From NCBI GenBank assembly GCA_024679065.1, contig JAGIQG010000023.1, forward strand, positions 10,230,001-10,294,000: DNA of 64,000 bases, read 5' to 3'. A program made the position numbers and the translations under genes. Shown here in pieces: positions 2,224 through 63,439 of the stretch. The notes under the pieces were generated by a model that worked only from the letters and a program-made list of their open reading frames with translations, searched no databases and was not told where the DNA came from. Origin of the DNA: Sphyrna mokarran (lineage: Eukaryota). The first letter of the stretch is position 1; each line of letters opens with the position of its first letter.

Positions 2224-2544
2224 TTTCAGGTGCATTGTGGGCAGAAAAGAGAGTCACAGGAATTGTGGGAAGAGCGATCACAATAAATTGCAATTATACT
2301 GAACAATACAAAGAAAATGTGAAATATTGGTGTCAGGGTTGGAGTAACTTTTGCTCATATTTAGTGAGAACAAATGATTCAGATGGAAGGCAAGGGAGAA
2401 CATCGATCACAGATAACAAGGCACAAGGAATATTTGCTGTTACGATGGAGGATCTTCACTCAGGAGATGCAGGATGGTATCGCTGTGGAATTGTTACATC
2501 TGGCATCGATCCAAAGTTTACTGTGGAGCTGCAAATATCTCACG
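2224..2544 (+). CDS. Gene A exon: V-type Ig domain 1 (CD300/pIgR/MDIR-like)
   Basis: ctcttcag|TT TCA GGT GCA TTG TGG acceptor and CAC G|gtagat donor (phase 1/1). Translation ALWAEKRVTG..INCNY..KYWCQGWSNFC..DAGWYRCG has the canonical V Cys/Trp/DxGxYxC plus the extra C-C' Cys pair typical of CD300/pIgR/TREM V domains. Confidence 0.92.
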
Positions 2545-3179
2545 GTAGATTATTCTCAATGATTTTCTTTAGTACTGAAATGCCTGATCAATGTCCTTTC
2601 CATGAGGAAACATTGACAGCTCCGATATCCCGAGGCTCTGCAGCAATGCAGAGTCTGACAGCTGAGGGGCAGAGACCTGGAAATCTGACTGTTGTGACAC
2701 AAACTCAATTTGTGGCCTGTCCAACATTCTGATCAAAAACTTCAAACATTATTAGACTAATAATTCCTTTAACTATAGGATATTATGAAAGAAATTACCC
2801 ACCTGGCTTAGAATATTTTTCTGTTTCTGAAATGTATTAAATATCACACTGTCAGGTTTTTATAGTCGGCATCAATCTAATAGTCAGACATTAACAAAGT
2901 GAAGTGAGCAGCCAGTTGGTAGTTAATTGTATCTTGTTGGTTCAGCACTGAATGGTGGGGCTGTGGAGGAGCACAGAGCGATTAAATATACAGAAATTAA
3001 CAATATTGTGGGAAGCCAGTCAAATTCCCAACATCCGTATGTATCTGCAATGTGTCAGTTTGTGTTTCTTTCAAATAAACCAGTGAAAACTCAAGGTGAT
3101 GCTGACAGGTTAAAGGTTAACAAATTGGCAAATTTAACAATTAAATAATCCAATATGGAGGAAGTCCTTGAAAGAGATT

Positions 3180-31651: not shown

Positions 31652-32609
31652 GGGCCTGATTTTACTATCTTCATTCTAAGTGCTGAGCCTGGGCACAATT
31701 CAGATCCAAAATCTGGGAAAACAGTTGGTGAATCCCATTCGTGCTGTGGGCGGGGTTTATCGTGCCCAAAACAGTCGGAGCTCTGAGAAAAAAAGTTGAG
31801 AAAGTGCGCCCATGTTAGATCGCTCCCCGGCCGCAGAAAGCAGAGAAAGCAGCGAAAAGTGGGAACAATGGCCCCCGGACACATCACTGTCCCCTTATCC
31901 ATACCCCCACCCCCCCACAACCCAGGCCAATCACAAACCCCTGCACCCCGCCCCCACCAATTGCCCACAAAGTGGCAGTGAACCACCCCCTCCTCCACTA
32001 GTGAATGATTGAGCTTCCCCAGACCTCCCAAGATACGTCTTATCCACCTCCTTCCTCCGCCTTCCCCAGAATGATCTGGCCTCATTCCCACCCCACCCCG
32101 AGGGAACATCTGACTCACCTCCTCCTCACCCCTTCGCCAAGAATGAACAGACCCGCTTCCCTCCTCCAACCAGACAACGATCGGCCCTCCTCCTCAACCA
32201 GACAACAATGAGGACTCACTCCCCCCTGCCCTCCAAGAATGATCTGACCTACCTCCCGCCTCCCCCCCAACACATCTCCCTACCCCCCTCCCACCCCTCC
32301 CCACCACCAATCTGAGTCACAGCGCTGTTGGAAGCTCTGAACTCACCTCTTCAACAGCTGGAGTGCCCGATTCAGACTTTTACTCAACATGTCCAATTTG
32401 GTGCAATTTGAATTGGTGATAAAGGGAAAATGCTGATAAAGTTGGGTGGGCAATTCATTAATTCAATTGAAATGAATGTATTTAAATCGTCGTTAGGCAA
32501 GAATTGAATCACGGCCATTCCTGGGTCTCAGTAAAGTGGTCATTTGCACTGACGCTGGCGCAGATTACATTAATGGCCTCACTTTACCACACAATGGTAA
32601 AATAGACCC
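31652..32609. mobile_element. Non-autonomous TIR element (MITE-like, possibly Harbinger) inserted in CR1
   Basis: Imperfect terminal inverted repeats GGGCCTGATTTTACTAT / ATGGTAAAATAGACCC; CR1 sequence resumes on both sides. Confidence 0.55.
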
Positions 32610-32853
32610 TGTATGTTCTATAAAGCTGCAACATGACTTGCCAATTTTTAAACTCAATACCCTGGCCTATGAAAGCAAGCATGCCATTTGCCTTCTTAAC
32701 TACCTTCCCGACCTTACAACCAGTTTACTTACTCAAAACTTTTACCCCGGTTCCCTTGTTTGCAAGATGGACAGAAGACAAACACAAGTAAAGATTCAAT
32801 AACTTTATTAACAATAATACTATTAACCTTAAATTACCCACATAAAACAAGAG

Positions 32854-33159
32854 GTTTTTATTCCAACTCAATCAAATCAAGTCCAATTCAGAGTGCCAAC
32901 AAGTTGAGACATTCCCCATCCAAGCTGACAAGACAGGGCTCTCACCTCCCATCTTGGGCTTGATTTACATGATCCAAGCTGATTGGAGTAGGCATAGCTC
33001 CTCCTCCTAAGGTTTGATCTAATTTGCATCTTAGCCAAAAGGCCAAAATGCCACTTTTAATAATTACTTCAAATGAATCTGAAATGTAACCTAATGACTT
33101 CAACAAAGCATAGCATATCAATACTACACTTGATCTTAGCCAAAAAGCCAAGAAGTGAA
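32854..33159 (-). mobile_element. U2-headed short retroposon, copy 1
   Basis: U2 nt 1-39 head, unique body, AATAAAAA end, flanked by ATAAAACAAGAG / ATGAAACAAGAG direct repeats. Confidence 0.8.
33121..33159 (-). pseudogene. RNU2: U2 snRNA 5' fragment (nt 1-39)
   Basis: TTCACTTCTTGGCTTTTTGGCTAAGATCAAGTGTAGTAT matches vertebrate U2 ATCGCTTCTCGGCCTTTTGGCTAAGATCAAGTGTAGTAT at 35/39. Confidence 0.88.
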
Positions 33160-33345
33160 ATGAAACAAGAGTTTTTTTTATTTTTTTTATATATGAAGCA
33201 AGAGGTTACCCCAGATTCAAGTGTACTACACGGGAACTTATTTCGGTTAAAGTGCAGGCCCAATTCTCTGAGTCCTTCTGCTCTGTCGTCATGAAGGTGA
33301 ATCTCGATGGCAGCTTCTCCCTTCCTTCCTTCTCTGGTCAGTCTC

Positions 33346-33652
33346 TTTTTTTCATTTATGTCCAATTCACTGCAATCAAAATTCAATTCAAAGTCTCAGC
33401 AAGTAAGACATTCCCGATCCAAGCTGACAAGACAGACATTCCACTTCCTGCCCTGAGATTGATCTACATGATCCAAGCTGATTGGAGCAGGCGTTGCACC
33501 TTCTACAAGACTTGATCTAATTTGCATCTTACCAAAAGAACGAGATGCCACTTTAAAAATTGCTGCAAATGAAGCCTCAGCATAACCTCATGACTTCAAC
33601 AAGTGCAAGATGCTAAAACTATACTTGATTTTGGCCAAAACTTCCAGACGAT
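33346..33652 (-). mobile_element. U2-headed short retroposon, copy 2 (more diverged)
   Basis: Colinear with copy 1 over its full length; starts ATCG, ends in an A-rich tail. Confidence 0.75.
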
Positions 33653-34214
33653 CAAGGTCATCTCCCTCATTGAGACTTCGCTGTTGCTATGTCTGAGAAG
33701 CGTTCTTTTATTCCACCTCCCCCCCCACCCCCCCACCCCCAACTCCACACACACACCCCCCCCTCCCCCCCAACCTTTCCAGATACTTCTCTGGCTTATA
33801 GCCAATGAGGTCTCAGGAGGGAGGTTCCAATACCCAGTGGGACCCCCTCCCCTGACAGGACCTGTCCCCAGGTGTCCATTTCTGTGCTGTTGCTTACATA
33901 GAACTTGTTGCCAGATAAGGTAACTGCAGGAATTCTCAGTGACAGAAAGTCTGGCCTGATCTGGGTTTCTAACAATAGGCCAGAGCGTTTCAATGGGATG
34001 CGATGATCTCCTGTTGGGTATCAGTGCGATGATTATTGATGGGTGATTGAGGGGCCAGGCCCAGACATGTTTCTGAGTATTTGTATATTTGACCTCAGTC
34101 AAGTTTGGTCTGCCTGAGGTTTGACTGTTTGATTTTAATTTGCCTAATTCTTTAGGATATGCAATTTAATCAGCCTTAAAACTAGGCCCTGATTACCACA
34201 CCACTGAGCTCGCT

Positions 34215-34620
34215 GCTGGGTGTCTGAAATGATTCCGATGCAAAAAGATTTAGGGCAACCGTCACCTTAATTCACAGGGAGCGGGTGGTTGCCCCTTCCC
34301 TGAGTTGTCAGGTGATGTGAGTGCCTCACATAGGTGTCGCTCCGTGCTCTTGGAGATCCGCAGCTGGTGACGGCACATCACCTCTGAGAGGGCCTCAAAT
34401 GAATTCCAGGGTCTGCACCTCCTTGCCCTCTGCACCCTCCGCCTTCTGTGCACCCGTTTGGGAGACTGCTCACCCACCTCCTGGCCCTCAGCAGCAGCCC
34501 CCCCCCTTCCTGAGAGACTGGGATTTGCTGCTCCTGCGGTGTTCTCCCCACACTCTCCACCTCCTGAGCTGCCTCCTCCTCCTCTTCATCCGCCACCATA
34601 ATGGAGAATTCCAAATCGAT
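34215..34620 (-). mobile_element. PIF/Harbinger transposase (HARBI1-like) N-terminal remnant
   Basis: RRRRVQRARR..SFEALSEVMCRHQLRISKSTERHLCEAL resembles the Harbinger nuclease N-terminus. Confidence 0.55.
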
Positions 34621-35875
34621 CAGTTCAAGATCTATCTGCATAGTGAGGTTGGGAAAGAGCAAAGAATGACAGATTAATGTCATTGGCTGCACTGACCCAG
34701 CATCACCTCAATCCCTCACTTGGGCCGGTACCCCCACTTGTGGGAGCTGGCAACACCACACAATCCATGGTACCGATTAGGTTGTGTGAAATTTCCATCA
34801 TGACAAATGCTGACACAGATTACACAGGCGGGTGTGCAGCCGTGGGCAATGCGCACTCTTGATCCATTGCTCTGTTACAGGCAGGTGTTGCTGGTCCGTG
34901 TCCCGGGGTAGGGAATCAGCACCAGATGGGTGTCCAGTGACAGCAGATTTCATGCACTCCTTGTCTGAACCTTGGCACTCCGGCCTGGAGCACTAGCTGC
35001 TTATTCTGGTCGGGCCTCAGTCAACACATGGTGCACTCCTCCACCCCTCCCCCTCATTTTCCCCCAGAAGCGCCCTAATCTTTGCCTCAGCAACAACATT
35101 TGTCATTACTGTAAACGCCGGAGGAGGTTTTATTGAGTGAAAGGTACTTTATAAAGAGCAAGTTATTGCTGTTGTTGTTGATTCCATCAATGAGTTAATA
35201 ATAAATAAGTTAATAATTCATTGCCCATATTAAATTGCCCCATTGTGTCAGGGAATTAGCAGGTTAAATATGTAGAGTTACAGAGATAGAGTCTGGGTGG
35301 CATTGTGCAGTCTCAATGAACCAAATGGTCTCTATCTGCACTGTAGGATTCTATGATAAAAGGCATTTTTAAAAAGAGCAAGTTATTGCTGTTGTTGCTG
35401 ATTCCACCAATGGGTTAATAATAAAAAAATGAACATGTTTCTCCACTTAAGGTTGTGGTCAATGAGAGTTCTAACTTTAGATTTACTCAAAATGAAGTTC
35501 TTACCCACTTGTAACAGTTTGTATTCAGAGTTCTGAATTTTCCAAATAGTTCCAATGTTTGATCATTTTTTATTGAGTTCAGAATTCTGTGAGTGACAAC
35601 TTCATTCTAAATAAGCACCAATTTACAGCAATATTCCATTAACTCCTCAAATTCATTAACGGTTGATGAGAAAGGCAAAGAGAGAGATTGAATTGGAAAT
35701 AAATGTGGGTTCATGTTTGCTGCATCTTGCAATGTTCATGGTTTGAAACTGCAAGAAAAATGTGTTGCTATCCTCAGGGTGGGGTGAGATAGAAATCCTG
35801 TGAATGTACAAGAGGTGTTAGATACGAAATGCAGAGCTGTGCTTGCAACAGCAAGAAGATCAGCATTGATACAGC

Positions 35876-36029
35876 ATTTTTTTAAAACTTTATTCCAATC
35901 CAATTCATCTCCTCTCCTGTCTTGGGCTTGATCTACATGATCCAAGCTGATTGGATAGATATAGCTCCTCCTCCAAGGCTTGATCTTAGCCAAAAGGCCA
36001 AGATGTCACTTTAAATAATTGTTTCAAAT
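35876..36029 (-). mobile_element. Same retroposon family, copy 3 (5'-truncated, internal deletions)
   Basis: Shares cttgggcttgatctacatgatccaagctgattgga and cttagccaaaaggccaagat with copy 1. Confidence 0.75.
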
Positions 36030-36199: not shown

Positions 36200-36625
36200 A
36201 ATAGGAGTAGGAATAGGATTAGGCCAACCAGCCCTTCGAGCCCTCCCTGACATTGAACAAGATTATGGCTGATCTGAAGTGGATCAGTTCTGCTTTCTCC
36301 CCACAACCCTTAATCCCCTTGTCTATCAGAAACCTATCTACCCATGACTTAAATATATTCAGCGGGGTAGCCTCCACCACTTCAATGGGCGGAGAATTCC
36401 AGACACTCACCACTCTCTGAGTGAAGAAGTTCCTCCTCAGCTCCAATCTAAACTACGCCCCCTCTTTTACTTTGAGGCTGTGCCCTCTAGTTCTGCTCCT
36501 TTCTAAGCGGGAAGAATCTCTCTACCTCTACCCTATCTAGCCCCTTCATTATCTTATATGTTTCTATAAGATCCCCCCTCAGTCTTCTAAACTCCAATGA
36601 GCATAGGCCCAGTCACAATTGTTTA
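36200..36625 (-). mobile_element. CR1 LINE 3' fragment
   Basis: ELRRNFFTQRVVSVWNS motif. Confidence 0.8.
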
Positions 36626-43077: not shown

Positions 43078-43398
43078 TTTCAGGTGCATTGTGGGCAGAA
43101 AAGAGAGTCACAGGAATTGTGGGAAGAGCGATCACAATAAATTGCAATTATACTGAACAATACAAAGAAAATGTGAAATATTGGTGTCAGGGTTGGACTA
43201 GCAGGTGCTCATATTTAGTGAGAACGGATGATCCAGATGGACGGCGAGGGAGAATGTCGATCACAGATAACAAGGCACAAGGAATATTTTTTGTTACAAT
43301 GGAGGATCTTCACTTAGGAGATGCAGGATGGTACAGCTGTGGAATTGTTACATCTGGCATCGATCCAAAGTTTACTGTGGAGCTGCAAGTATTTCATG
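43078..43398 (+). CDS. Gene B exon: V-type Ig domain 1
   Basis: Paralogue of 2224-2544 with the same splice sites; YWCQGWTSRC, DAGWYSCG. Confidence 0.92.
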
Positions 43399-46300
43399 GT
43401 AGATTATTCTCAATGATTTTCTTTAGTACTGAAATGTCTGATCCATCTTTTATTCGCGCAGAAACATTGACAGATATCCCGAGGCTCTGCAGCAATGCAG
43501 AGTCTGACAGCTAGAGGGCAGAGACCTGGAAATCTGACTGTTGTGACACAAACTCAATTTGTGGCCTGTCCGACATTCTGATCAAAAACTTCAAACATTA
43601 TTGGGCTAACAATTCCTTTAACTATAGGATATTGTGAAAGACATTACCTACGATGCTCAGAATATTTTTTCTGTCCCTGAAATGTATTAAATATCACACT
43701 ATCAGATTTTTACAGTCGGCATCAATCTAATTGTTAGACATTAACAAAGTGAAGTGAGCAGCCAGTTGGTGGTAATTGTACCTTATTGGTTTAGCAGTGA
43801 ATGGTGGGGCTGTGGGGGAACACAGAGGGGTTAAATATACAGAAATTGACAATATGTTGGGAAGCCAGTCAAACTCCCAACATCCGTATGTATCTGCAAT
43901 GTGTCAGTTTGTGCTTCTTTTAAATAAACCAGTGAAAATTCAGGGTGAAGCTAACAGATTAAAAGTTAACAAATCGGAAAATTTAATAATAATCCAGTAT
44001 GGCGGAAGCCCCTGAAAGGGATTAAAGAACAAAGAACAGGACAGCACAGGAACAGGCCCTTCGGCCCTCCAAGCCTGCACAAATCGCATTTACCTATCTA
44101 GACGAAGTGCTTATATTCCTCTTTTCTCTGTTTGTTTATACGTCTGTCAAGGTAAGTCTTAAATGTGGCTAATCTTTCTGCCTCACCCACCTCACTTGGT
44201 AGTGTGTTCCAGATCCCCACTACAGCCTGAGTAAAAAAGTTCTCCTGGACATTTCCACTGAACTCCTCCCCACTTATCTTGAAATTGTAATTGTCATTTC
44301 TGCCCTGGGAAAACTTCCAACTGTTCACTTTATCTATAACTTTCATAATTTAACAAACTTCTATCAGATGGCCCTCAGCCTCCTTTCCAGGGAAAATAAT
44401 TCCTGTTCATTCAAATTGTCCTCGTAGTTAATACCCCCCACATCAGGCAACATCCTGGTAAATCTTTTCTGCAATCTCTCTAAAGCCTCCACGTCATTCT
44501 GGTTGTGTTGTGACCAGAATTGGACACCATATTCCAAATGTTCCACACGATCATAAAAAACCCCATGGAAACTTTAAATATGTCAATCAGTGCGTGGTCA
44601 AATCTTCCCCACTGAGAGATGGGTTATCAGTTTCAGTCTATTAATCAGTCAGTGAGTGTAATTAGTGGAATCTACCTGCGGCTGCTCGGGTTACTGAGCA
44701 AGGGCAGAAGACAGAGGCAATGGGGGAGGCTGAAGAAGTGACTGGGAAAGATGCCACAAAGGATTGGACCCTCACTGCTTATTTCTAGCCGGATTGTGTG
44801 AAAGGTTTAATATCAGTACTTACAGGTGTTGACTTTCACAACAGTGGCCGGAATGTGTATTTGGCGATTGTATCTATCAGATCAGCATGGGTGGTTTTCA
44901 GGCTGTTTTATTTTGGGCCTCAGATGAGATCAATAATATCAATAGCAGCAACTGCCTCCTCCGCACAGAGCCTGAGCTCCACAAGACAAAGGATTGAACA
45001 GAGACAAGCAGCTCGCTGATGGGCAATCCCACAACACAGGGAGTACACGTTTCCTGATCAGTTTCCTTGACATGTTGGAATTTCAGTGTCTGAAGAGGCT
45101 CATTTGACAACATAAGGAATGGACCAGAGCGATTCTCCAACTCAGATTGATTCAGTTTGAAATGTGGTCAGCAGAACCAAATCCCACTGGAGAGGCCGGC
45201 AGCATAGTGCTGAATGGACCACTGCGTACACAACAATCTGTCACTAAGAATATTGGTGCATGCGCGCTGGCCCCCTCACTACCGTCCTCCCGATCACTAG
45301 CTATCCCGACTCCCCATCACCATCCGACCACTGGCCTACTGGAGCTCTCCTGGGCAAGTCCCAATCTCCCCTCACCCCGATAGCCAGCTCCGACAGCCCT
45401 CGCCTCTCCCTCTTCCATTGATCCCAGTGTAGAGTGTCAGTGAAAACCCCCAACTCACTGAACCCCCAATAGGCCCCAACGCCCAATATGTCACACCCCA
45501 TCCCCCTCCCCCTCCCAACATCACCCACATTGACGCTGCCTGATGCTGGATGTCAGAATATTTTTTTCATTCGTTTGGGGACATGGGCATCGCTGGCAGG
45601 GTAGTATTTATTGACAATCCTGAGAGATTTGAGAGGCCATTTCAGAGGACAGTTAAGAATTCAGGCCAGACCAGGAAAGGATGGTAGATTTCCTTCCCTA
45701 TCAGATATTAGTGAACCAGATGTTTTTTTCCAACAACTGGCAATGGTTTCATGGTCATCAGTAGATTCCCAATTCCAGACTTTCTTTATTGAAATCAAAT
45801 TCCACCCACTACCTGCTGTGGTGGTATTCGAACCCAGGTCCCCAGAACATTAAGTGAGATTCCAGATTAATAGGTTAGCGATAACACCACTCGGCCACCA
45901 TCTCCCCATACGTATACACATATCTTTGGTTGTGGGAGGAAACTGAAGCGCACACAGGAAAACCAAGCAGACATGGGGAGAATATGCAAATTCCACACTA
46001 ACCACACAGCCAACGCTGGAATTGAATCCGGATCCCTGGTGCTGTGAGGCTGCAGTGCTAATCACTGTGCCACTGTGCCACACTGGGTCCTATCTAATCC
46101 CACCATCTAGTTCTTGATCCAGGATGCTGTAGGTTACGGCATCTCAAGTTTAATCCATTTTGTTTAATGCGATCAGGTTATCCACCTCTCCCATCCTCTA
46201 CCACTCTTCCAGGCAGTGAATTCTGGACTCTCAAGAGTGAAATAACCCATTGTCATCCCCCGAGTGAAATAACCCATTGTCCCAAATCTCCTCTAATCCA

Positions 46301-62110: not shown

Positions 62111-62515
62111 ACGAAGAGTTTTAAAATGTGTCCATTGAGATGTAGGTATTGCCGGCAAGGACAGTATTTGTTACCCATCCCCGAATTGTTTGTTCCTGTG
62201 GAGCAGCACGGAGAGGCAGCGATTTGGGCGAGTGTAAAGTTCGAGTTTAAGGTAATTTTTAACATTTTCTTTTTGGTTAAAGTAGCGAAAGGTGGTAGTT
62301 TTTTGCTGTTTTTTTTAAAACTAACTGGAAACCGGAAGTTGTCATAAGGAGGCTTGCCGGTAGTTGTAGTTTTTCTCTCTGACTCTATAAATTGGTACAG
62401 AGAGGAAACCTGATACTCTACACAGGTAGAGTATCCCACCCTGCCCCCTCCTCTAACCTAATAATAAAAGTGTGTGGGAAGTTTTTTTTCTCTCCTAGAA
62501 ATTAAAGTATCAGAG

Positions 62516-63439
62516 ATGGCAAAGCAGGCAGTACGTTGCACCTCCTGCGGTATGTATGAGGCGAGGGACACCAGTAGTGTTCCTGCTGATTATACCTGCA
62601 GGAAGTGTGCCCATTTGCAGCTCCTTGAGGATCGTGTTAAGGAGCTGGAGCTGGAATTAGAGGAACTCAGGATAATTCGAGAGGTTGAGGCAGATATTGA
62701 CAGGAGTTACAAAGAGATAGTCACTCCTAAAAGAGATTCTTGGGTAACTATTAGGAAGAGGGGTAAGAAGCAATCGGGTAGACAATCCCCTGGGGCTGTT
62801 CCCCTCCAAAATAAGTTTTCTGTCCTGGAGGCTACAGTTGAGGAAGAATCAACTGGAGATAGCCAAAGGGAGCAGGTCTCGGGGGGTGAGCCTGCTGTGA
62901 ATGCTCAGGTGGGTAGGGGAAATAAGAGATTGGGCCTGGTAATTGGAGACTCCATAGTTAGGGGGACAGATAAGAGAGTAAATAGTAATAAATGGGACTC
63001 AGGGCTGGTGTGTTGTCTCCCAGGGGCCGGAGTCCAGGACGTCTCAAAGCGGGTTTTCAAGATTCTTAAGGGAGAGGGGAGTCAGCCCCAAGTCATAGTT
63101 CATGTAGGGACACATGATGTAGGTAGGACAAGGGAAGGGGATATTAAACAGAAATTTATGGAATTGGGGTGGAAGCTTAGGGCCAAAACAGACAGAGTGG
63201 TTATCTCTGGACTCTTGCCTGTGCCACGGGATAGTTTAGAGAAAAACAGAGAGAGGGAATGTTTGAACTCGTGGCTGCGGGGATGGTGCAGGAGGGAGGG
63301 GTTCAGGTTCTTGAACAATTGGGGCTCATTCTGGGGTAGGTGGAACCTCTACAAGAGAGATGGTCTACACCTGAACCAGAGGGGAACCAATATCTTGGGG
63401 GGAAAATTTGCAAAGGCTATGCATGGGGGTTTAAACTGA
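62516..63439 (+). CDS. CR1 ORF1p: CxxC..CxxC zinc finger, coiled coil and SGNH/GDSL esterase domain
   Basis: CTSCGM..CRKC; LEDRVKELELELEEL; GDSIVRG, HVGTHD, DGLHLN motifs; open frame. Confidence 0.9.
   Translation: MAKQAVRCTSCGMYEARDTSSVPADYTCRKCAHLQLLEDRVKELELELEELRIIREVEADIDRSYKEIVTPKRDSWVTIRKRGKKQSGRQSPGAVPLQNKFSVLEATVEEESTGDSQREQVSGGEPAVNAQVGRGNKRLGLVIGDSIVRGTDKRVNSNKWDSGLVCCLPGAGVQDVSKRVFKILKGEGSQPQVIVHVGTHDVGRTREGDIKQKFMELGWKLRAKTDRVVISGLLPVPRDSLEKNRERECLNSWLRGWCRREGFRFLNNWGSFWGRWNLYKRDGLHLNQRGTNILGGKFAKAMHGGLN

What the first reader, a model, noticed from the sequence alone, without database searches (positions are those of the whole stretch)
32854..36029. Candidate U2-snRNA-headed SINE family in a shark (three copies within ~3 kb)
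Seen: on the minus strand a ~305 bp unit begins with U2 nt 1-39 (35/39 identity, including the branch-point-pairing GTAGTA), continues into a non-U2 body and ends AATAAAAA. Copy 1 is bracketed by a 12-bp target-site duplication with one mismatch (32842-32853 / 33160-33171). Copy 2 (33346-33652) is the same length, with a possible degenerate TSD (ggtcagtctc / ggtcatctc). Copy 3 is 5'-truncated. The rest of U2 does not follow any copy, so the U2 head appears to move with the element. Known: snRNA-headed SINEs (SINEU) were described from crocodilians, and the Keno (Tx1) and Utopia retrotransposons insert into U2 genes near this position (from memory, about nt 37-39). Inference: a U2-promoter-driven chimera of U2 and a U2-targeting LINE 3' end became a non-autonomous retroposon, independently of crocodilian SINEU.
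Basis: partly seen in the sequence, partly recalled or inferred. Interest (0 to 1): 0.8.

Follow-up and report, generated by a model that had tools for sequence, protein, structure and literature searches.

The report
U2-headed retroposon copies in an elasmobranch
Three old, independently inserted copies of a short non-coding mobile element that starts with the first 38 bases of the U2 spliceosomal RNA sit within 3.2 kb; this resembles the snRNA-headed SINEU elements so far described only from crocodilians.

Summary
On the minus strand there are two full-length copies (c1 32854-33159, 306 nt; c2 33346-33652, 307 nt; 78% identical) and one 5'-truncated, shorter variant (c3 35877-36029). Both full-length copies start at U2 nt 1, keep U2 to nt 38 and share the same junction. 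U2 does not continue after it. c1 has an 11-of-12 target-site duplication, which 0 of 20,000 random placements reached. c2 has a 9/10 duplication. The flanks are unrelated, so these are separate insertions.

- a second, internal U2 5' module (nt 1-31);
- three copies of c1's 15-nt target around an A-rich stub, meaning the site was used twice;
- c3 belongs to a different subfamily.

There are no pol III boxes, and T4 runs occur inside each copy. The head ends where Keno/Utopia LINEs insert into U2 (PMC4640811).

Best reading: a SINEU-like, LINE-mobilised retroposon family.

This scan has 38 unchecked first-reader notes of the same kind on other pieces of this genome. The open-access papers I searched describe no such family in cartilaginous fish.

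The parts
32854..33159 (-). Copy 1, full length (306 nt). Order: U2 nt 1-38 head, 67-nt linker, internal U2 module, body, AATAAA plus short A run.
   Evidence: Rfam U2 46.4 bits.
33013..33054 (-). Internal second U2 5' module of copy 1 (U2 about nt 1-27, an 11-nt insertion, then CAA).
   Evidence: c1 positions 9-27 match 33046-33028 at 18 of 19..
32842..32853 (-). 3' target-site duplication of copy 1. It extends to a 15-mer at 32842-32856.
   Evidence: (family D14).
33160..33174 (-). 5' target-site duplication of copy 1, the middle copy of the 15-mer.
   Evidence: (D14).
33175..33207 (-). 18-nt A-rich stub (33175-33192) preceded by a third copy of the 15-nt target (33193-33207). Read as an earlier, almost fully 5'-truncated insertion at the same site.
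   Evidence: (D14: 3 copies at 87-100%).
33346..33652 (-). Copy 2, full length (307 nt), with the same junctions as copy 1. Three extra bases (33653-33655) lie between the TSD and U2 nt 1.
33656..33664 (-). 5' target-site duplication of copy 2 (GAGATGACC).
33336..33345 (-). 3' target-site duplication of copy 2 (GAGACTGACC).
35877..36029 (-). Copy 3, 5'-truncated inside the linker. A shorter subfamily that lacks the 11-nt insertion and a 49-nt body segment and ends AATAAA-GTTTT-A7.
35979..36009 (-). Internal U2 module of copy 3, aligned to U2 model positions 1-31.
   Evidence: U2 26.4 bits, E 0.021; 26 of 28 identical to the c1 head.

Best explanation
These are three old, independently inserted copies of a composite, non-coding, LINE-dependent retroposon of the SINEU type. 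Its order is: U2 snRNA nt 1-38, a 67-nt linker, a second U2 5' module (nt 1-31), a body of about 160 nt with a partial internal duplication, then a polyadenylation-like AATAAA and a short A tail. Shown: the structure, the shared junction, the TSDs, the separate insertion sites, the absence of pol III promoter boxes, and the age (K2P 0.20-0.28 between copies). Inferred: an RNA polymerase II transcript that begins at U2 nt 1 is reverse-transcribed at a nicked target by a poly(A)-type LINE, most plausibly a Tx1/Keno-like one. The head ends exactly at the Keno/Utopia insertion site of U2. I therefore infer that each U2 module was gained when a copy, or its LINE partner, landed in a U2 gene at nt 38/39 and was then co-transcribed from that gene's upstream snRNA promoter. 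That would explain both the exact 5' end and the stacking of two U2 modules.
For: U2 model positions 1-38 at the 5' end of c1, and nothing convincing beyond. c1 and c2 are collinear across the junction, 78% identical over 292 nt. TSDs: c1 11 of 12, reached by 0 of 20,000 random placements; c2 9 matches of 10 plus an indel. Both full-length copies begin within 3 nt of U2 nt 1. Five flank-against-flank comparisons give nothing beyond shuffles. c1's 15-nt target is present three times around an A-rich stub. A second U2 module sits inside all three copies. No A or B box at up to 1 mismatch, and T4-T5 runs in every copy. Three copies within 3,175 nt of a 64-kb window, all on one strand: P = 0.007, or 0.002 with strand. 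PMC4640811 section 6: U2 downstream of Utopia starts at nt 39, the site is identical for Keno, and nt 1-38 is expected upstream. PMC4494074: SINEU has U1/U2 heads, recurrent 5' additions, partial duplications, poly(A), tandem insertions sandwiching a TSD, and Tx1 partners that carry U2 heads. Tx1 elements exist in the whale shark and Callorhinchus (PMC8455134 passage). Unchecked leads: 38 first-reader notes of U2-headed SINE-like elements of about 300 nt on other pieces of this genome.
Against: Only three copies were verified by me. No LINE with a matching 3' end is in the window. A tails are short (5-7 A) and AATAAA is not intact in c2. No TSD was found for c3. The 3' flanks show no residual U2-like target motif: best 6 of 9, null P = 0.12. 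The internal module ends at nt 31, not 38, so the capture-at-the-Keno-site idea fits only the outer head. snRNA-type promoters normally couple to 3'-box processing rather than polyadenylation (established knowledge), which is awkward for a U2-promoter-driven, A-tailed transcript.
Confidence: 0.75

Rival explanations
1. It is a non-autonomous deletion derivative of a Keno-like Tx1 LINE that carries a transduced U2 5' flank. That would make it a non-autonomous LINE rather than a SINE. Linker and body would be the LINE's own 5' and 3' ends, so it would be mobilised in cis-like fashion by that one LINE family.
For: The head ends at nt 38, which is the Keno/Utopia site. Kojima reports Tx1 families with U2 heads. 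There is an unchecked note of a Keno-like Tx1 with a U2 head at a non-U2 site in this genome (s1-919127).
Against: No Tx1 sequence was available to compare with. The second U2 module in the middle is not expected from a simple internal deletion of a LINE. This differs from the best explanation mainly in classification.
Confidence: 0.3
2. The copies are independent chimeric retropseudogenes, each made by reverse-transcriptase template switching from some RNA onto U2 snRNA. They would not be copies of one transposing unit.
For: Such U2 chimeras are known in human (Buzdin 2002 and Garcia-Perez 2007, as cited in PMC4494074 Discussion).
Against: c1 and c2 share the same junction, linker, internal module, 11-nt insertion and 49-nt duplication. 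Independent switches would give different junctions and partners.
Confidence: 0.04
3. This is a local segmental or tandem duplication of a single U2-chimeric pseudogene, and there is no family.
For: There are three copies in 3.2 kb on one strand, and none elsewhere in the 64 kb.
Against: The flanks are unrelated in 5 of 5 comparisons. c1 and c2 have different TSDs. c3 is truncated and belongs to another subfamily. 38 unchecked notes on other pieces of the genome describe the same kind of element.
Confidence: 0.05
4. The U2 head is target flank. A headless element would insert specifically at nt 38/39 of U2 genes or pseudogenes, so U2 1-38 merely precedes each copy.
For: The junction coincides with the Keno/Utopia site.
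Against: The TSDs lie outside the head. The 3' flanks do not continue as U2: best 6 of 9 to the target motif quoted in PMC4640811, null P = 0.12.
Confidence: 0.04
5. These are functional U2-variant or other structured non-coding RNA genes.
For: The Rfam U2 score just reaches the gathering threshold.
Against: Only nt 1-38 align, and the Sm site and 3' stem-loops are missing. c2 folds no better than shuffles (z = +0.88). CpG decay and 20-28% divergence between copies are seen.
Confidence: 0.02

Closest known systems
SINEU-1 of crocodilians (Kojima 2015, PMC4494074)
   Same: A short non-coding retroposon with a short 5'-terminal U2-derived head. Further snRNA modules are stacked by 5' addition, there are partial internal duplications and a poly(A)-type 3' end, TSDs are about 10 bp, and insertions occur in tandem around a TSD. 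There is no pol III promoter, and oligo-T runs lie inside the element.
   Different: The host is an elasmobranch, not a crocodilian; the paper states that no SINEU was detected outside crocodilians. Sequence relatedness of the bodies could not be tested because no Repbase consensus was available. No U1 module is present in these three copies. Here the outer head ends at nt 38, which is the Keno/Utopia site. The head lengths of SINEU-1 are in a figure and supplements that I could not see.
Keno (Tx1 clade) and Utopia (NeSL clade), U2-gene-targeting LINEs (PMC4640811; Kojima and Fujiwara 2004 as cited there)
   Same: Their insertion leaves U2 nt 1-38 upstream and nt 39 onward downstream. The head of this element is exactly that upstream fragment.
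   Different: This element is 306 nt and non-coding, sits at non-U2 sites with its own TSDs, and its 3' flanks are not U2-like.
U2/U6 snRNA-LINE chimeric retropseudogenes made by template switching (as reviewed in PMC4494074 Discussion)
   Same: An snRNA sequence is fused 5' of another retrotransposed RNA and flanked by TSDs.
   Different: Those are one-off events with variable junctions. Here two diverged copies share one junction and one complex architecture.
Pol II-transcribed composite retroposons such as SVA (as discussed in PMC4494074)
   Same: No internal pol III promoter, an AATAAA-type end, and mobilisation in trans by a LINE. Transcription probably depends on upstream sequence.
   Different: This element is much shorter, is built from snRNA 5' ends, and lives in a different host with a different partner.

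Membership tests
SINEU (Kojima 2015) | 5' region derived from U1 or U2 snRNA | tested here: met
   Rfam U2 positions 1-38 at the 5' end of c1. c2 is collinear.
SINEU (Kojima 2015) | Short (<500 bp) non-coding retroposon flanked by TSDs | tested here: met
   306 and 307 nt. The longest stop-free stretch is 63 codons or fewer. TSDs.
SINEU (Kojima 2015) | 3' poly(A) tail | tested here: inconclusive
   Only 5-7 A remain. This is consistent with old copies but is not a long tail.
SINEU (Kojima 2015) | Many copies of near-identical structure (a transposing unit, not a sum of chimeras) | tested here: inconclusive
   Three copies in the window, and 2 of 2 full-length ones share the junction. The 38 notes are unchecked.
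SINEU (Kojima 2015) | Recurrent 5' addition of snRNA modules and partial duplications (SINEU-1) | tested here: met
   A second U2 module inside all three copies. A 49-nt segment with a repeated TCAGCTTGGAT in c1 and c2 is absent from c3.
SINEU (Kojima 2015) | Sequence homology to the crocodilian SINEU-1/2/3 consensus | not testable with these tools
SINEU (Kojima 2015) | Shared target preference with, and mobilisation by, Tx1 LINEs | not testable with these tools
   No Tx1 in the window. The only hints are one twice-used target at c1 and the clustering.
Canonical pol III SINE (tRNA/7SL/5S head) | Internal A and B boxes | tested here: not met
   No match at up to 1 mismatch to the recalled consensus motifs in c2, c3 or c1 beyond its head.
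Canonical pol III SINE (tRNA/7SL/5S head) | No internal oligo-T terminator | tested here: not met
   2-5 runs of T4-T5 in each copy.
U2 snRNA gene (RF00004) | Full U2 with Sm site and 3' stem-loops | tested here: not met
   46 model positions are skipped and the remainder aligns poorly. The score of 46.4 comes from nt 1-38.
Template-switch snRNA chimeric retropseudogene | Independent events with variable junctions and partners | tested here: not met
   c1 and c2 have the same junction and architecture.
Keno/Tx1 non-autonomous derivative | 5' U2 fragment ending at the Keno site (nt 38) | tested here: met
   against PMC4640811 section 6.
Keno/Tx1 non-autonomous derivative | 3' end shared with a Tx1/Keno LINE | not testable with these tools
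   No Tx1 sequence from this genome or from Repbase was available.
Keno/Tx1 non-autonomous derivative | Insertion into U2 or U2-like targets | tested here: not met
   The best match of the three 3' flanks to the quoted target motif is 6 of 9, null P = 0.12.

The most novel reading that the evidence does not exclude
Elasmobranchs carry a diverse family of snRNA-headed retroposons. It is either independent of the crocodilian SINEU or shares a very old origin with it. In this reading, heads are not gained by random template switching but by promoter capture: a copy, or its Keno-like Tx1 partner, lands in a U2 gene at nt 38/39. The gene's external snRNA promoter then drives a transcript that starts at U2 nt 1, and the new head-plus-element becomes the next master copy. 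Repeating this cycle would produce the stacked U2 modules seen here. That would make snRNA-headed SINE genesis a predictable by-product of U2-targeting LINEs across vertebrates.
Probability: 0.3. Interest if true: 0.65.

Novelty: new member of a known kind. Interest (0 to 1): 0.45.

Why it matters
SINEU is the only described class of SINE-like elements with pol II snRNA heads. In the papers I could search it is reported only from crocodilians.

A second occurrence in cartilaginous fish would show that this route to new retroposons is either very old or recurrent. A head ending precisely at the Keno/Utopia cleavage site would also make Kojima's open question directly testable: how such promoter-less elements are transcribed and how they keep acquiring snRNA heads.

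There is a practical consequence too. c1 just passes Rfam's U2 gathering score (46.4 against 46), so copies of this family can be mis-annotated as U2 genes in shark genome annotations.

Tried and rejected
- **c3 as a full-length copy with a decayed head.** Rejected: its upstream DNA against the 5' part of c2 scores no better than 235 of 500 shuffles.
- **A degraded fourth copy upstream of c2.** It was suggested by TGGAATAAA at 33707-33715(-), where the window has 5 matches against 1.1 expected. Pairwise alignment is borderline (19 of 500 shuffles) and the nhmmer profile scan does not find it, so it is not accepted. The two other TGGAATAAA sites (13924-, 46967+) show no further similarity.
- **A third U2-like module inside the body.** Weak: 7 of 500 shuffles for c3 and 173 of 500 for c1. 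Left open.
- **Residual U2-like target at the 3' junctions.** Not found.
- **RNA structure.** c2 has z = +0.88. A two-sequence consensus fold has 2 of 60 pairs with changes on both sides, which is uninformative.
- **Pol III boxes.** None.
- **A Tx1 or any poly(A)-type LINE in the window.** Of 10 ORFs scanned against Pfam, two are V-set domains, one is a GDSL-lipase/OSK LINE ORF1-like protein and seven have no hit.
- **A bacterial-type promoter/terminator scan of the spacer.** It found nothing and does not apply to this genome. It was a wasted call.
- **Host taxon.** The protein atlas gave only 'Chordata'. The LINE ORF1-like protein's best named relatives are elasmobranch: Mustelus asterias at 67% identity, then rays, skates and the zebra shark. 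'Shark' is therefore supported only to the level of Elasmobranchii.
- **Literature.**
  - 'SINEU' as a whole word: 23 papers hold the term, 21 were listed, and none is on cartilaginous fish by title.
  - 'U2 snRNA' + SINE + shark: 5 papers, none relevant by title or abstract start.
  - 'U2-derived' + SINE: 2 papers.
  - snRNA + SINEs + Chondrichthyes + retrotransposons: 2 reviews, which cite only crocodilian SINEU.
  - A six-term search: 124 papers, 20 listed, none describing such a family.
  - Repbase and Dfam could not be searched. The supplements and figures of PMC4494074 and PMC4640811 (head alignments, Tx1 families, target figures) were not seen and may bear on head length and on the Keno 5' junction.
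Full report
**What is there.**
Read on the minus strand, the region holds three related units.
- Copy 1 (c1, 33159..32854, 306 nt) matches itself, copy 2 (c2, 33640..33355 in the BLAST; 77.7% over 292 nt, E 4e-54) and copy 3 (c3, 36029..35908; 80.7% over 135 nt, E 3e-31). Nothing else in the 64-kb window matches at a convincing level.
- A profile of the non-head parts of the three copies, run with nhmmer at maximum sensitivity over the whole window, again finds only these three at E<0.05.
- Rfam at gathering thresholds gives a single hit in the window, U2 (RF00004) at 33017-33159(-), 46.4 bits against a threshold of 46.
- The alignment shows where that score comes from. Model positions 1-38 align without gaps, with 32 of 38 letters identical to the consensus. 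Then 46 model positions are skipped and the remainder is a low-quality alignment. The Sm site and the 3' stem-loops are not there. This is a U2 5' end, not a U2 gene.

**Anatomy.**
The full-length unit, in order:
- the U2 nt 1-38 head;
- a 67-nt linker;
- a second U2 5' module;
- a body of about 160 nt;
- AATAAA and a few A.

The second module is clearest in c3 (35979-36009), which Rfam aligns to U2 positions 1-31 (26.4 bits, E 0.021). It matches the c1 head at 26 of 28. In c1 and c2 the module carries a shared 11-nt insertion.

c1 and c2 also share a 49-nt body segment that repeats the motif TCAGCTTGGAT and is absent from c3. c3 starts inside the linker, and its upstream DNA is unrelated to the 5' part of c2 (235 of 500 shuffles do as well). 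c3 is therefore a 5'-truncated copy of a different, shorter subfamily.

**Are they retroposed copies?**
- c1 is bracketed by an 11-of-12 direct repeat flush with its ends. None of 20,000 random placements in the window reaches 11 of 12.
- c2 is bracketed by GAGATGACC / GAGACTGACC, with three extra bases before U2 nt 1.
- I found no TSD for c3.
- The flanks of the three copies are unrelated in all five comparisons made. This rules out a segmental or tandem duplication of a larger unit.
- The TSDs lie outside the U2 head.
- The 3' flanks do not continue as U2. The best match to the U2 target motif quoted in PMC4640811 is 6 of 9, and 12% of random sites reach that.

The head therefore belongs to the element and moved with it.

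c1 and c2 are collinear through the U2/body junction and share every later peculiarity. They descend from one composite source and are not independent template-switch chimeras.

**A twice-used target.**
Upstream of c1 the 15-nt target is present a third time, separated from the middle copy by an 18-nt A-rich stub (family D14). The order is target, A-rich stub, target, c1, target. This is what two successive target-primed insertions at one nick site would leave, the first almost completely 5'-truncated. Kojima describes the same picture for crocodilian SINEU-3: tandem insertions sandwiching a TSD.

All three copies also lie within 3,175 nt on one strand of a 64-kb window. The probability is 0.007, or 0.002 with strand. 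This hints at a local or sequence preference of the inserting enzyme. It is a single case, so I treat it as a hint only.

**How it probably works.**
- No A or B box at up to one mismatch is present, and every copy contains T4-T5 runs. Pol III transcription is therefore unlikely. Kojima made the same argument for SINEU.
- Both full-length copies begin within 3 nt of U2 nt 1. The source RNA therefore started at the U2 start site.
- The head ends at nt 38. PMC4640811 section 6 (read in full) states that U2 sequence downstream of Utopia insertions starts at nt 39, that the 3' flank is identical for Keno, and that nt 1-38 is the fragment expected upstream.

My inference is the following. A copy, or its Keno-like Tx1 partner, inserted into a U2 gene at this site. 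It was then co-transcribed from the gene's upstream promoter, and the resulting head-plus-element RNA was retrotransposed by a poly(A)-type LINE. Repeating this would stack heads.

Caveats:
- the inner module ends at nt 31, not 38;
- snRNA promoters normally direct 3'-box processing rather than polyadenylation (established knowledge);
- no partner LINE could be examined.

Tx1 elements do exist in cartilaginous fish (passage in PMC8455134).

**Age.**
K2P distances between copies are 0.20-0.28. The CpGs of the U2 modules are mostly decayed in c1 and c3. These are old, dead copies.

**Host.**
The window also encodes two V-set domains and a LINE ORF1-like GDSL-lipase/OSK protein. The best named relatives of that protein are elasmobranch (Mustelus asterias 67%, then rays, skates and the zebra shark). 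'Shark' is supported to the level of Elasmobranchii, and I did not try to go further.

**What could not be checked.**
The decisive test is copy number and junction constancy across the genome. The look-up of sequencing runs returned only Logan contigs. From then on I worked beside that stretch and did not look for the locus or family in any collection.

The scan's own index holds 38 first-reader notes with the words U2, snRNA and SINE, and 29 with SINEU. They lie on other pieces of this genome, out of 1,082 windows with notes, and mostly describe elements of about 280-420 nt. Among them are U1-headed and U1-U4-U2 forms, a tandem pair at one target, and a Keno-like Tx1 with a U2 head. These are unchecked AI notes. 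They are leads that fit a dispersed, diverse family, not evidence.

**Comparison with the known.**
The architecture and behaviour match SINEU as defined by Kojima 2015 (abstract, Results and Discussion read). That paper states that no SINEU was detected outside crocodilians. Later papers I could open still cite only crocodilians, apart from one loosely worded sentence listing avian, crocodilian and mammalian genomes for SINEU and SINE28 together. My searches found no description of an snRNA-headed SINE in cartilaginous fish.

Repbase and Dfam were not searchable, and homology of the bodies to crocodilian SINEU could not be tested. I therefore file the element as working like SINEU and as a probable new member of that kind. 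Membership by descent stays open.

**Verdict.**
- This is an ordinary-sized but neat addition to a rare class of retroposons, with a mechanistic clue (the nt-38 junction) worth following at genome scale.
- Interest is 0.45.

Noticed in passing
window 33017-33159 (-): c1 just passes Rfam's U2 gathering score (46.4 against 46) although only nt 1-38 are U2. Copies of this family could inflate U2 gene counts in automated annotation.
   Followed up: yes
window 62474-63436 (+): A 321-aa ORF with a GDSL-lipase/OSK domain, typical of an esterase-type LINE ORF1. Its best named relatives are elasmobranch proteins (67% to a Mustelus asterias entry). One relative is named as a Pseudomonas aeruginosa protein (P0011, 63% identity), which looks like host contamination in a bacterial record.
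   Followed up: partly
window 2235-2729 (+) and 43089-43511 (+): Two ORFs with immunoglobulin V-set domains (E 2e-11 and 7e-12). They fit the first-reader notes of paired ITIM-bearing or CD300-like receptor genes in this window.
   Followed up: no
window 34200-34700 (-): Between c2 and c3 lies a decayed coding-like stretch that, from memory only, resembles the N-terminal region of Harbinger/PIF-type transposase genes. Two ORF pieces gave no Pfam hit.
   Followed up: partly
window 36219-36446 (-) and 32600-32760 (-): Fragments that read like the C-terminal end of a CR1/L2-type LINE ORF2 lie just upstream of c3 and just downstream of c1, on the same strand. The 75-aa piece gave no Pfam hit. The resemblance is recalled, not tested.
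   Followed up: no
window 33716-33790 (-): A G-rich, (GGGGT)-like low-complexity tract lies directly upstream of a TGGAATAAA motif that matches the element's 3' end. A degraded fourth copy was considered but not supported.
   Followed up: yes
window 35148-35213 and 35368-35433: Two 66-nt direct repeats at 89% identity, 220 nt apart, between c2 and c3 (family D6). This is an unrelated short repeat of unknown kind.
   Followed up: no
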